Below are positions 4,444 through 11,000 of a DNA stretch of 64,000 bases, in pieces. The position numbers and the translations under genes are program-made. The stretch comes from Setoptus koraiensis (taxonomy: Eukaryota > Animalia > Arthropoda): positions 14,880,001 through 14,944,000 of the forward strand of contig CM106585.1 in the NCBI GenBank assembly GCA_048013815.1, in the 5' to 3' direction. The notes beneath the pieces are model-generated. The model searched no databases. It was not told where the DNA came from and was given only the letters and a program-made list of their open reading frames with translations. Within the stretch, counting starts at the first letter, position 1, and every line of letters starts with the position of its first letter.

Positions 4444-4523
4444 CCCATCACGTCAAAGACAAGGTAGTGAGATGAATAGGATACAGTGACAACATCTCAT
4501 TACCCAGTCTTTCACTCGATAAG
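4444..4523 (-). ncRNA. mir-71: pre-miR-71 hairpin, left copy (5p at 4493-4514, UGAAAGACUGGGUAAUGAGAUG; 3p at 4451-4472)
   Basis: 5p resembles canonical UGAAAGACAUGGGUAGUGAGAUG with an intact seed. 3p UCUCACUACCUUGUCUUUGACG resembles canonical miR-71-3p. The arms base-pair. Confidence 0.9.
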
Positions 4524-7500
4524 ACAACAGATAGCACTAGATATACACTTAAAACACTATTACTTGAGCTGTAGATAATTCTTGAAAGTAACTAATGTTG
4601 ATCGGTTTCACTGTGACCACTCAATGATGGTTGTTGCTTCACTACGATGATTTGTTGACTGTTTCAATGATCAGACACATTTAGTGTCTACTTATATGCC
4701 ATAAGCGTTGTATTTTTTCCGTTGTCATCTTGTTGGGTATCGCGTGGACTTGTTGTTAAAACTAGTTAGTAATTAATACATGTCTTCATAGTGTCCTCTT
4801 GTAATAAATATCTGATAATAGTATTATTATTATTATGATTAAATGATTTTGACTCATGCCAACAGTGAATAATAGTGTGAGCAAAGAGCATAACAGGCTG
4901 TAGAATGTGAGTGCTGAAGTTGAAATAATTTTAAAACGTTGTCTATAATAGTGTGTGATTAGGCTTAAAATTAAAGATTTCAATGAAAATAATAATAATA
5001 GTTGTATGGATAAATATTAGAATTTATCAATTATTAGGCTAAAAGAATAGTCTCTAATGCTAACTGACTATTTATTTATAGGAGTACATGTTAGGCTATT
5101 TGTTTGCGCAAGAGAGTGAGAGAGTGTGTGTGTGTGTGTGTCTGTGTGCTTGTGCATGTGTCGATGTGTTTGTGTGCAACTGGCGTGCTTGTGTCTCTCA
5201 GTGTGTGTGTGTGTGTGTCGGAATAGAGAACAGTGGTGAACAGTGCAGAACAGTTGAGAGAGAAGAACATCGAGTGAACAGTGCATGGCGTCAGTATCCT
5301 ACAGAGTAGACCAACAATTATTCTCTTTTATTTTGTTAGTGTCAGTATTTGGTGTTCGCGTCTACATGCACTAACAGGCATAGTAGACATTGTGAACAGC
5401 GCGCACAGAAGAGCGCTCTTGTTTCGTTGTGCGTCAGCACACCGAATTGAACCAAAGATGTGCACGGGCCCAATGGTGCAGCCAGCCAATGATGGGCTAG
5501 CAATGCTACAGTGCCACAGTGCTACAGTGCTAGCTGGCAACTTCGGCAGCAACTCTCAAAGTAGAGTCTGTACTCACGTTAGGTAAGTTGAAGCTGTGCC
5601 TTTGTGGGCGCAAGCAGTTGAGTCAGCGGCAGACACAACGAACGCGCACTCACACTGCCACAGAACAGACAGCGCCAGCAGCAGCCCTTGTCAGCGCAAA
5701 TTTTGTGTGCAGTCTCACACAGAAAACAGCAGCGCATTGTGCTTGTGTAAAAGCTCACACAAACACATACACTCGCACTCACAAAACTAGCGACAAACTC
5801 ATTTCAAAATGGCCGCCTCTTTTCCTGAGTTTCCTCTGACGCGCCGCTAGCACACACACACACTCACACCAACATGCACACTGGCACATGAAAGCCTACA
5901 ACCAACTGAAATGCATGAAGAAAGCACGCACAAGAATTGCAGTGGAATAATGCTAGTTCTGTTCACCGAGTGGCGATAGTTAGTGAGAGAGCGCGGGCAC
6001 TTACGGACATGCGTGAAGGCATTAGTATAGTAGTCAACGGCAACGGCAATGTTGTCGAGTGGGAGTAAAATAGGCGCAATTCTAAAGAACACAAGAATGC
6101 CGTAGAATAACTGTGCCCTACTGATGTGAGCGTGTTTTTAATGCTACAGTACAGTGTAATTGTAGAGAAAAGTACAGTACAGCTCGCGCGGCGCGGCGCG
6201 CCTGAGTTTGAGCCAAACTCAGCCGCCTATTTTCGAACTCACAACCGTAGCACTAGTGTGCATGATACTGGTGCCTAATGAATGCGCGCGCGCATCATCT
6301 ACAGTCTGTCGACTGCAGACAAGTATAACGTTCGTTAGTGCACTAATAATAATAATAATGGTCCATTTGCAGCAATCTTCTCGAGCCACTAAAGATGCGC
6401 GCGAACATCCCATCCGTTTCGAAATTTTCGCGCATTTTCCCCACAACCACACACCTGGTCGGAAAAATATCCGGCAGAGCGACGCTACTCGCAACTTTCT
6501 ACAAGCAGTGTAAGCGAGCTGCAGTCGATCTGCAGGATTGCGAACTGGTAAACATAGGTAGTGCGCCCCCTTGCACCGGAACGCGCACCCACGCGCCTCT
6601 GCTCAGGAGCGAGCAATCAAAAAAAGAAAACATTCAACGGAACAGTCTAACGGACGCACTTTGGTGGCTCGATGTCAGCGCCTCTGGTAGACTTTCCTCA
6701 AACTAGGTGTGCTGATATCGGAAATGTATTGTGGTATAAGAATTTCCGCTCATGTTTACCGATACATTTCATATATTCGTGAGCACCTTACGGGGAGTTT
6801 GAAGAAAATTTAGGGATCCGTCGCAGTGGCTTCTCGCGATCCGGGTCCGGTCTGAAGCCGACGCGGACGGATTTCCTAGCGATATCTTTCGCAGGTTCGG
6901 ATCGAATCGCGCGCATCTCTGCAAAACAGCGCGTAATCGTTCTTCACTCGTCTAGTTTGTGCGCCAGGGAGCGCTCCAGGCGCAAATAGAAGTTGGCAGC
7001 TCTGTTGTTTGGCAGCGCAAACTTTGCAGTGCGAAGTCATCTGGAGTTTGGATGATTCATGGACAACAACAACCACAAGAACAGCATATCTAGTGCTAAT
7101 AACGTATTCTAATGGAGTACAAGTACAGTTATAATACAAACGCTCTCCCGAGTATTAGAATGTTCGAATCAAGTTCACTATCAACTGGTAGACAAAATTC
7201 AGGTTCCATCGCAGCTTTGGGGCAGCTGCAGTTCGGGAATCCGCTTGTGCAGCTGAATGCGATGTGTGTCGTCTTAATAATGAGATAGTCGCGCGATGAT
7301 GCTTTTTCAATCTGTCTGTTGATTGTAAATTAACAATTGTAGACACTTGGTTGTCTTTTTACTTAAGTTGGTCTGTTGGTGTGCCGGCCAACATTGGCAA
7401 ATATGGTAGCCATGGCAACAGAACATGCCAGTGGCCACATTGGTCAAGATGAGCGACTTTCTGTTGACAAGAAGCGGATGCTGTTGCTGTTGATTTGTTG

Positions 7501-7774
7501 AGAAGTTGACACAAGTTTGCTGCGCGCCCACAGTTGTAGAGGCGCCTCTTCTGAAACTTGCAAAACTTTCGCTGCAGCAATGGATTGCATTGTTGCTTGT
7601 TACTGTTGTTTAGAGCGCCACCGGCAGGGTCGGGTTGTTGACACTCAATTCTGTTCAATGTTCAGTTCGAGGATCTCATGTCTGTGACACGAGTTTTACA
7701 GTTTGTATAGCTCGATATCTATATTTAACAAGATGCGGTTTCGTTTCGGCGGGTCATGTTTTTCGCACAAAATA

Positions 7775-7894
7775 CAACAACAACAACAACAACAACAACA
7801 ACAACAACAACAACAACAACAACAACAACAACAACAACAACAACAACAACAACAACAACAACAACAACAACAACAACAACAACAACAACAACAA
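7775..7894. repeat. Perfect (CAA)40 microsatellite
   Basis: Direct reading of the sequence; it gives poly-Q/N/T in the three plus frames. Confidence 0.98.
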
Positions 7895-10364: not shown

Positions 10365-10382
10365 ATAAATAAATAGTCAGTT
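10365..10382 (+). promoter_or_regulatory. Candidate core promoter of pri-miR-71/2 (TATAAATA and GTCAGTT Inr-like motif); mirrored on the minus strand at about 5063-5080
   Basis: Motifs lie about 550 nt upstream of mir-71 on the miRNA-sense strand in both arms, downstream of CA-repeats. TATA-Inr spacing is atypically short. Confidence 0.35.
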
Positions 10383-10920
10383 AGCATTAGAGACTATTCT
10401 TTTAGCCTAATAATTGATAAATTCTAATATTTATCCATACAACTAATATTATTATTTTCATTGAAATCTTTAATTTTAAGCCAATTCACACACTATTACA
10501 GACAACGTTTTAGAATTATTTCAACTTCAGCACTCACATTCTACAGCCTGTTATGCTCTTTGCTCACACTATTATTCACTGTTGGCATGAGTCAAAATCA
10601 TTTAATCATAATAATAATAATGCTATTATCAGATATTTATTACAAGAGGACACAATGAAGACATGTATTAATTACTAACTAGTTTTAACAACAAGTCCAC
10701 GCGATACTCAACAAGATGACAACGGAAAAAATACAACGCTTATGGCATATAAGTAGACCCTAAATGTGTTTGATCATTGAAACAGTCAACAAATCATCAT
10801 AGTGAAGCAACAACCATCATCGAGTGGTCACAGTGATACGGATCAACATTAGTTAATTTCAAGAATTATCTTCAGCTCAATTAATAGTGTTTTAAGTGTA
10901 TATCTAGTGCTATCTGTTGT

Positions 10921-11000
10921 CTTATCGAGTGAAAGAATGGGTAATGAGATGTTGTCATTATATTCTATTCATCTCACTACCTTGTCTTTGACGTGATGGG
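10921..11000 (+). ncRNA. mir-71: pre-miR-71 hairpin, right copy (5p at 10930-10951, UGAAAGAAUGGGUAAUGAGAUG; 3p at 10972-10993)
   Basis: Same hairpin as 4444-4523 with four differences: three in the loop and C>A at nt 8 of the 5p arm. Confidence 0.88.

What the first reader, a model, noticed from the sequence alone, without database searches (positions are those of the whole stretch)
4444..11000. Duplicated miR-71 with a seed difference and reciprocal retention between arms
Seen: left 5p is UGAAAGAC-UGGG.. (canonical seed GAAAGAC, C8 pairs with G in the stem). Right 5p is UGAAAGAA-UGGG.. (seed GAAAGAA, A.G mismatch). The 3p arms are identical and the other three differences are in the loop. 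The arm with the dead nuf keeps the canonical miR-71; the arm with the intact nuf carries the seed variant. Known: miR-71 clusters with miR-2 in protostomes, and nt 2-8 set targeting. Inference: sub- or neofunctionalisation, with a new 5p target set or a shift to 3p usage in the right copy.
Basis: partly seen in the sequence, partly recalled or inferred. Interest (0 to 1): 0.8.

Follow-up and report, generated by a model that had tools for sequence, protein, structure and literature searches.

The report
Duplicated mite miR-71, one copy mutated
A small mirror-image duplication in this mite-type genome carries two copies of the ancient miR-71/miR-2 microRNA pair, and one miR-71 copy has a single new letter at position 8, which looks like ordinary drift in a spare copy and has no independent read or expression support yet.

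Summary
Inverted arms at 2128-5874 and 9570-13346 flank a 3.7-kb spacer. Each arm carries one mir-71 and one mir-2 hairpin, transcribed outward. The mir-71 hairpins differ at 5p nt 8 (C at 4507, minus strand; A at 10937) and at three loop positions. The 3p arms are identical.

Four related lineages in plant metagenomes keep the same 22-nt 5p with C8 paired to G and the same 3p, with unrelated loops. So A8 is derived and unique to the right copy.

Nothing supports neo- or subfunctionalisation:
- The change is uncompensated.
- The hairpin differs between arms at about the local background rate.
- Arm identity is patchy (a 548-nt perfect run beside 10% divergence), the signature of arm-to-arm gene conversion.
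- The left nuf lacks the exon at 13349-13451, which lies just outside the repeat, so it was probably truncated when it was copied.
- nt 2-7 are unchanged, so only 7mer-m8 and 8mer pairing would shift.

Caveat: in contigs of three DNA studies, the only contig over the hairpin is the left-arm (C) form. A at 10937 is therefore unconfirmed, though contigs cannot prove absence. No small-RNA data exist.

The scan had already noted this palindrome (s1-333834) and similar ones elsewhere in this genome. Verdict: a real but ordinary young paralogue pair, of low to moderate interest.

The parts
2128..5874 (.). Left arm of the inverted segmental duplication
   Evidence: blastn and global alignment to the right arm: 4.7% mismatches, 144 gap columns
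5875..9569 (.). Unique spacer of about 3.7 kb, richer in G+C, with microsatellites
   Evidence: No arm homology. GC 0.46-0.51. Contigs of three runs match it with 0 differences over 8500-9561
9570..13346 (.). Right arm of the inverted segmental duplication
   Evidence: The nuf part is matched exactly by the RNA contig of X7
4446..4520 (-). Left pre-mir-71, ancestral form. 5p 4493-4514, nt 8 = C at 4507, 3p 4451-4474
   Evidence: Rfam RF00832 49.0 bits, E 7e-8. Fold -36.8 kcal/mol with C8-G paired
10924..10998 (+). Right pre-mir-71, derived form. 5p 10930-10951, nt 8 = A at 10937, loop 10952-10969, 3p 10970-10993
   Evidence: Rfam RF00832 47.5 bits, E 2e-7. Fold -33.5 kcal/mol with A8 unpaired
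4266..4339 (-). Left pre-mir-2
   Evidence: Rfam RF00047 46.6 bits, above the gathering score of 45.5
11103..11176 (+). Right pre-mir-2, identical to the left copy and inside a 130-nt identical run (11091-11220)
11978..13451 (-). Right nuf / Rab11-FIP3-like gene. Known exons are 13451-13349, 13186-13082 and 12979-11978. It is intact and transcribed
   Evidence: Pfam RBD-FIP 3e-14 and Rab11-FIP3 6e-8. Spliced contig in X7. Open frame across the joints
2291..3474 (+). Left nuf pseudogene. It lacks the exon at 13349-13451 and has in-frame stops and frameshifts. Its last 203 codons are 99.5% identical to the right copy
   Evidence: tblastn. 548-nt identical run, left 2863-3410

Best explanation
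This is a young inverted segmental duplication (a palindrome with a 3.7-kb spacer). It copied a minimal mir-71/mir-2 cluster, about 1.3 kb of its upstream sequence and the 3' part of the convergent nuf/Rab11-FIP3 gene. The two clusters point outward.

The lineage's mature miR-71 is otherwise frozen: 22 of 22 nt in the 5p and the whole 3p are identical in four other lineages. With two copies present, constraint on each is relaxed, and the right copy has picked up one derived C-to-A change at 5p nt 8. The change removes the C8-G pair and is not compensated.

The variant hairpin most likely is still transcribed and processed. This is inferred from its intact basal stem, a good fold, and an upstream 1.25 kb that is 97.8% identical between arms. 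Its product would keep nt 2-7 and therefore 6mer and 7mer-A1 targeting, but would lose the nt-8 match to GUCUUUC sites. That makes it a slightly weakened or slightly shifted redundant copy, not a demonstrated new function.

Arm-to-arm gene conversion is active in this palindrome and may erase or spread the change.

What is shown: the anatomy, the ancestral state and the patchy identity. What is inferred: relaxed constraint, continued processing and the effect on targets.
For: - Arms, spacer and divergence: (172 mismatches, 101 transitions and 71 transversions, 144 gap columns).
- Hairpins and cluster.
- C8 is ancestral. L001, L002 (identical to L005), L003 and L006 all have the identical 5p with C8-G paired and the identical 3p, with unrelated loops of 23-67 nt. 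Each has one mir-2 350-406 nt downstream and no second copy on contigs of 11-54 kb.
- Difference rates between the arms: hairpin 4 of 75 (5.3%); inter-hairpin segment 6.7%; 11177-11977 7.2%. One change in 46 mature-arm nt is not significantly below background (P about 0.27).
- Gene conversion: a 548-nt perfect run (12042-12589) lies beside 10-11% divergence, and a 130-nt perfect run covers mir-2.
- The right arm is real: the X7 contig matches 12089-12780 exactly, where the left arm differs at 22 sites plus 25 gap columns.
- Literature: mir-71 is linked to mir-2 across invertebrates (PMC3384581). Acariform and parasitiform mites usually have one mir-71, while cluster duplicates are known in spiders, scorpions, horseshoe crabs and flatworms (PMC4987109, PMC3772069).
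Against: - There are no small-RNA or pri-miRNA reads for either copy. X7 has zero depth over 8500-12006, except at a microsatellite.
- A at 10937 was not seen in any independent data set.
- One substitution cannot separate drift from selection. A change at a site invariant in four other lineages could also be adaptive.
- Whether further miR-71 copies exist elsewhere in this genome was not tested.
Confidence: 0.6

Rival explanations
1. One reading: the A8 copy is sub- or neofunctionalised. It would be a new miR-71 isoform with a changed 7mer-m8/8mer target set (UUCUUUC instead of GUCUUUC), or changed arm usage, kept by selection alongside the canonical copy.
For: - The changed site is otherwise invariant in five hairpins from different lineages.
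- The hairpin still folds well, with z -4.8.
- The segment holding it has not been homogenised, although conversion tracts lie nearby.
Against: - It is a single uncompensated change.
- The loop and flanks differ at the same rate as the background.
- nt 2-7 are unchanged.
- There are no expression or target data.
- An internal nt-8 change does not alter duplex-end asymmetry, so a 3p shift is not expected (established knowledge).
Confidence: 0.1
2. A at 10937 is not a fixed feature of the species. It would be a base error in the assembly, or a state private to the assembled strain, with other samples carrying the C form in both arms, for example after gene conversion.
For: - In X1, X5 and X3 (three studies), the only contig over 10339-11026 carries the left-arm letter at all 21 listed sites of difference, apart from site 10770 in X5, whose contig spans only 10500-11026. 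It shows 22 differences in X1 and X3, which equals the number of left/right differences in that span. No contig reads A at 10937.
- The same haplotype won in all three runs, which is not what a random choice between two equally covered paths would give.
- The depth of that contig is 2 to 2.7 times that of outer-arm contigs where both versions are kept. About 1.4 times is expected if left-specific words were single-copy.
Against: - Contigs drop one of two similar paths, so they show presence and not absence (tool statement).
- Measured against the spacer contig, the depth ratio is 1.1-1.34, close to the 1.40 expected from the reference structure. Depth is therefore inconclusive.
- The right-arm haplotype differs at 22 sites in this segment with a transition-rich spectrum, so it is not an error pattern.
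- The right arm is confirmed elsewhere by exact contigs: X7 at 12089-12780, and X1 at 12644-12795 and 12974-13186.
- A single-base error landing on exactly this base is unlikely a priori.
Confidence: 0.2
3. One of the two clusters is silent, so there is no functional paralogue pair. The silent one could be the right copy as a decaying pseudo-miRNA, or the left copy lying among nuf debris.
For: - No RNA contig covers either cluster.
- The left arm is otherwise gene debris.
- The right copy has the destabilising change.
Against: - The upstream 1.25 kb is 97.8% identical between arms.
- The mir-2 hairpins are identical across a 130-nt run, with P about 0.02 for 0 differences in 74 nt at 5%.
- Pri-miRNAs are normally too short-lived to appear in assembled RNA contigs.
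Confidence: 0.1

Closest known systems
Conserved invertebrate mir-71/mir-2 cluster (Marco et al. 2012, PMC3384581)
   Same: A mir-71 hairpin is followed on the same strand by a mir-2 hairpin within a few hundred nt. The 5p of mir-71 and the 3p of mir-2 carry the conserved sequences.
   Different: - The cluster is minimal, with one mir-2 only.
- The lineage-specific mature miR-71 lacks canonical nt 9 and has A where the consensus has G at nt 15.
- miR-2 has UA at nt 11-12.
Duplicated mir-71/mir-2 clusters in spiders, scorpions and horseshoe crabs (Leite et al. 2016, PMC4987109) and in flatworms (Marco et al. 2013, PMC3772069)
   Same: The whole cluster is present twice. In Schistosoma the paralogues diverged in expression.
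   Different: - Those copies are old and lie on different scaffolds or chromosomes.
- Here the copies are a few percent diverged, 6.4 kb apart, in mirror orientation and subject to gene conversion.
- Mites were reported to have usually one mir-71.
- From my own recollection, known paralogues keep GAAAGAC; this was not checked against a database here.
Palindromes with arm-to-arm gene conversion (concerted evolution of inverted repeats, as on primate sex chromosomes; from general knowledge)
   Same: Inverted arms lie around a unique spacer. Identity is a mosaic, with long perfect tracts beside diverged tracts.
   Different: - It is small (3.7-kb arms), with overall divergence near 5-10% rather than below 0.1%.
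- Conversion is inferred from the pattern, not shown by phylogeny.

Membership tests
mir-71 (Rfam RF00832) | Hairpin matches the family covariance model at its gathering score (50 bits) | tested here: inconclusive
   Scores are 49.0 bits (left) and 47.5 bits (right), E 7e-8 and 2e-7. The relatives L001-L006 score 41-48 bits. The shortfall comes from a lineage-wide 1-nt deletion in the 5p.
mir-71 | 5p seed nt 2-8 = GAAAGAC | tested here: met
   The left copy and all four related lineages have GAAAGAC. The right copy does not; it has GAAAGAA. It keeps nt 2-7 (GAAAGA).
mir-71 | Linked to mir-2 on the same strand within 10 kb | tested here: met
   mir-2 starts 105 nt after the mir-71 hairpin in both arms.
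mir-2 (Rfam RF00047) | Hairpin at or above the gathering score (45.5 bits), with a 3p starting UAUCACAGCC | tested here: met
   Both copies score 46.6 bits. The seed motif occurs once per arm.
Bona fide expressed microRNA (reads from both arms with Drosha/Dicer offsets) | Small-RNA reads with precise 5' ends from the 5p and 3p | not testable with these tools
   No RNA-labelled run holds the region. All runs are contigs. X7 has no depth over the cluster.
Palindrome under arm-to-arm gene conversion | Inverted arms with a unique spacer and mosaic identity (long perfect tracts beside diverged sequence) | tested here: met
   A 548-nt perfect run lies beside 10-11% divergence. Direction and timing of conversion were not tested.
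Sub- or neofunctionalised paralogue pair | Distinct expression or distinct conserved target sets for the two products | not testable with these tools
   This needs small-RNA-seq and genome-wide 3'UTRs. Only one 64-kb window is available.

The most novel reading that the evidence does not exclude
The A8 hairpin is expressed and loaded into Argonaute. This streamlined mite would then have a second, lineage-private miR-71 isoform whose strongest sites (7mer-m8 and 8mer) read UUCUUUC instead of GUCUUUC. The isoform would be held by selection against homogenisation by gene conversion in the palindrome. That would be a very early, datable step in the birth of a new seed family from one of the oldest bilaterian microRNAs.
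Probability: 0.1. Interest if true: 0.45.

Novelty: new member of a known kind. Interest (0 to 1): 0.25.

Why it matters
miR-71 is one of the most conserved bilaterian microRNAs, and changes inside nt 2-8 are very rare. A young pair of known ancestry, with one such change, would be a convenient natural experiment on how redundancy relaxes constraint on a microRNA seed, provided the change is real and expressed. As it stands, the pair documents three things:
- a lineage-specific shortened miR-71;
- one more gene-converting palindrome in this genome.

No functional claim can yet be made.

Tried and rejected
- **Two independent 1-nt deletions.** Rfam aligns the two 5p arms with the gap in different places (left lacks consensus nt 9, right lacks nt 8), which could suggest independent deletions from a canonical 23-mer. 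I rejected this. All four related lineages already have the shortened UGAAAGACUGGG form, so the right copy differs by a substitution.
- **Foldback assembly artefact.** Rejected because of the 3.7-kb unique spacer, 5-10% arm divergence with a transition-rich spectrum and indels, and exact independent contigs for parts of both arms.
- **Copy number from contig depth.** Inconclusive. The ratio is 1.1-1.34 against the spacer contig, which is itself inflated by microsatellite words, and 2.1-2.7 against outer-arm contigs. The expectation is 1.40.
- **Exact-protein look-ups.** I looked up chance ORFs overlapping or beside each hairpin and a 672-aa anoctamin ORF, hoping to fetch independent contigs and a species name. 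All five were blank.
- **Aculops lycopersici genome paper (PMC7738191).** Its supplements hold no miR-71, miR-2 or miR-13 entry. Its method disallowed indels, so it would miss this shortened form.
- **Synteny.** tblastx and tblastn between the window and the metagenome loci found none.
- **More copies or hairpins in the window.** There are no further mir-71 or mir-2 copies in 15000-64000. Extra hairpin-like folds at 9635-10059 are not kept between the arms.
- **Species identity.** Not tested. 'Eriophyoid-type mite' comes from earlier notes only.
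Full report
**Observation**

- On the minus strand at 4446-4520, and on the plus strand at 10924-10998, lie two 75-nt hairpins.
- They differ at four positions: 10937 (5p nt 8; C on the left copy, A on the right) and 10958, 10960 and 10964, all in the 18-nt terminal loop.
- The 5p arms read UGAAAGACUGGGUAAUGAGAUG and UGAAAGAAUGGGUAAUGAGAUG. The 3p arms are identical.
- Both fold as clean hairpins: -36.8 kcal/mol (z -6.0) and -33.5 kcal/mol (z -4.8). C8 pairs with G in the left copy. 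A8 is unpaired in the right copy, which widens an existing 1x1 internal loop.
- Rfam's mir-71 model scores them 49.0 and 47.5 bits (E 7e-8 and 2e-7), just under the gathering score of 50.
- A mir-2 hairpin (46.6 bits, above its 45.5 threshold) follows 105 nt downstream in each case.
- There is only one mir-2 per cluster, and no further copy of either family elsewhere in the window.

**Setting**

The hairpins sit in an inverted segmental duplication.
- The left arm is 2128-5874, the right arm is 9570-13346, and the unique spacer is about 3.7 kb.
- A global alignment gives 172 mismatches (101 transitions, 71 transversions) and 144 gap columns. That is 4.7% mismatch among aligned columns.
- The clusters are transcribed outward, each with about 1.3 kb of duplicated upstream sequence.
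- Identity along the arms is a mosaic. A 548-nt perfect run (12042-12589) and a 130-nt perfect run covering mir-2 (11091-11220) lie beside segments that are 7-11% diverged. This is the expected signature of arm-to-arm gene conversion.
- Earlier notes of this scan describe the same palindrome (s1-333834) and similar ones elsewhere in this genome (s1-367050, s1-354344). I tested the pattern only for this locus.

**The nuf gene**

- The 338-codon ORF at 11978-12994 (minus strand) carries Pfam RBD-FIP and Rab11-FIP3-like domains. It is therefore the Rab11-FIP3/Nuclear-fallout homologue.
- Run X7 holds a contig identical to 12089-12780. The left arm differs there at 22 sites plus 25 gap columns.
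- X7 also holds a spliced contig joining 13451-13349, 13186-13082 and 12979-12807. The joined exons keep one open frame. The right copy is thus real, intact and transcribed.
- The left copy (2291-3474, plus strand) has in-frame stops and frameshifts. It lacks any counterpart of the exon at 13349-13451, which lies 2 nt outside the repeat.
- The left nuf was therefore most probably incomplete from the moment of duplication.
- Its last 203 codons are 99.5% identical to the right copy because they lie in the conversion tract.
- 'Reciprocal retention' is thus a correct description of where things lie, but not evidence of complementary loss.

**Ancestral state**

A scan of metagenome contigs for the 22-mer, allowing A or C at nt 8, returned six loci.
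- Five are true relatives in four distinct lineages: L001, L002 (identical to L005), L003 and L006. Two of the contigs are labelled in the output, one as a plant metagenome assembly.
- All have the identical 5p with C8, the identical 3p and C8-G paired, with completely different loops of 23-67 nt.
- Each has one mir-2 350-406 nt downstream and no second copy on contigs of 11-54 kb.
- Outside the two hairpins, they share no detectable DNA or protein similarity with the window.

From this I conclude:
- The shortened miR-71 (canonical nt 9 missing, A at consensus G15) is an old, strongly constrained lineage feature.
- C8 is ancestral, and A8 is a derived state seen only in the right copy.
- The duplication is specific to the window's lineage.
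- The gap placement in Rfam's alignment, which might suggest two independent deletions, is an alignment artefact.

**Drift or new function**

- The hairpin differs between arms at 4 of 75 nt (5.3%). This is the same as its surroundings: 6.7% between the hairpins and 7.2% downstream.
- One change in 46 mature-arm nt is not significantly fewer than background (P about 0.27).
- The mir-2 hairpin with 0 changes in 74 nt is mildly unusual (P about 0.02) and lies in a perfect tract.
- The C-to-A change is not compensated in the 3p. It costs 3.3 kcal/mol and leaves nt 2-7 intact.
- By the established hierarchy of site types (8mer, 7mer-m8, 7mer-A1, 6mer), the product would keep 7mer-A1 and 6mer targeting. 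It would lose the nt-8 match to GUCUUUC sites and gain it for UUCUUUC sites.
- An internal change does not alter the end asymmetry that governs strand choice, so a shift to 3p usage is not expected. This is established knowledge and was not tested here.

The simplest account is relaxed constraint on a redundant copy. Neofunctionalisation is not excluded, but nothing here supports it.

**Independent data**

Nine public runs from five studies hold part or most of the stretch. None is labelled RNA, and all are kept as contigs. I laid four runs on 8500-13500, within the 6,000-letter limit.
- In X1, X5 and X3 (three studies), the spacer is matched exactly.
- The only contig over 10339-11026 (10500-11026 in X5) reads the left-arm letter at all 21 listed sites where the arms differ, including C at 10937. 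The one exception is site 10770 in X5. The contig shows 22 differences in X1 and X3, the number of left/right differences in that span.
- No contig reads A at 10937.
- Contig assembly discards one of two similar paths, so this does not prove absence.
- Depth is ambiguous. The ratio is 1.1-1.34 against the spacer contig and 2.1-2.7 against outer-arm contigs. I computed 1.40 for the reference structure.
- It is still notable that the same haplotype won in three studies.

A at 10937 is therefore unconfirmed. I give about 0.2 to the base being either a private state of the assembled strain or an error. The right arm as a whole is real, because X7 and X1 hold exact right-arm contigs. No RNA contig covers either cluster, which is uninformative for short-lived pri-miRNAs.

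**Comparison with known cases**

- mir-71 linked to mir-2 is the ancestral invertebrate arrangement (PMC3384581).
- Mites usually have one mir-71. Duplicated clusters are known in spiders, scorpions and horseshoe crabs (PMC4987109) and in flatworms, where the Schistosoma paralogues differ in sex-biased expression (PMC3772069).
- The present case is a new, very young, local and mirror-image instance of cluster duplication. It has a minimal cluster and a lineage-specific shortened miR-71.
- The Aculops lycopersici genome paper mapped miRBase sequences without allowing indels (PMC7738191). Its supplements list no miR-71 or miR-2. That method would miss this form.
- The species was not identified here. 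'Eriophyoid-type mite' rests on earlier notes (s1-325851).

**Verdict**

The anatomy and the ancestral state hold, but the functional inference does not.
- The finding is a new member of a known kind, with interest about 0.25.
- The decisive tests are phased raw reads at 10937 and small-RNA-seq counting the two 5p variants.

Noticed in passing
window 12042-12589 and 2863-3410: A 548-nt perfectly identical run between the arms lies inside the last nuf exon, flanked by 10-11% diverged sequence. It is a recent gene-conversion tract that keeps the C-terminal 203 codons of the dead left nuf 99.5% identical.
   Followed up: partly
window 629-922 and 2085-2124: There is extra nuf debris outside the left arm. 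One older fragment has 51% amino-acid identity to nuf residues 67-175 and contains stops. A 40-nt copy of 13089-13125 sits just before the arm. This suggests more than one round of rearrangement.
   Followed up: no
window 11978-13451 (run X7): Runs X7-X9 are not labelled RNA. X7 nevertheless holds a spliced contig that removes 13187-13348 and about 12980-13081, so these runs are probably RNA-seq of the same species. This gives the intron-exon structure of the right nuf.
   Followed up: partly
window 2128-13346: A minus-strand read-through from nuf would contain nuf sense, the left miRNA cluster in sense, and left-nuf antisense. That would be a potential long hairpin RNA against nuf. No RNA contig supports read-through: X7 depth is zero over 8500-12006, apart from a microsatellite bin.
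   Followed up: no
L001, L002/L005, L003, L006: Four metagenome lineages share the derived mature forms: miR-71-5p without canonical nt 9, and miR-2-3p UAUCACAGCCUACUUUGAUGAGUG. They have 47-54% G+C and long uninterrupted ORFs of 600-1255 codons next to the cluster. L001 and L003 have what looks like the same neighbouring ~610-630-codon ORF next to the cluster. L006 has a 67-nt structured loop in mir-71.
   Followed up: partly
window 9885-9974 (+) and 5450-5539 (-): A strong local hairpin of -47 kcal/mol in the right arm is much weaker in the left arm (-29) because of indels. It lies in a locally palindromic, G+C-rich stretch and is probably not a conserved RNA.
   Followed up: no
window 7756-7916 and about 9060-9096: The spacer holds long (ACA)n/(AAC)n and (CAA)n microsatellites. 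The second draws thousand-fold contig depth in all runs and inflates the mean depth of the spacer contig.
   Followed up: no
window 4447-4521 (+) and 10923-10997 (-): The antisense strands of both mir-71 hairpins also score with the mir-71 model (41.3 and 35.8 bits), because the hairpin is nearly self-complementary. The A8 change lowers the antisense score more than the sense score.
   Followed up: no
window 10770 (run X5): X5's left-haplotype contig carries the right-arm letter T at 10770, between left-arm letters at 10759 and 10799. This is a polymorphism or a small conversion patch in that sample.
   Followed up: no
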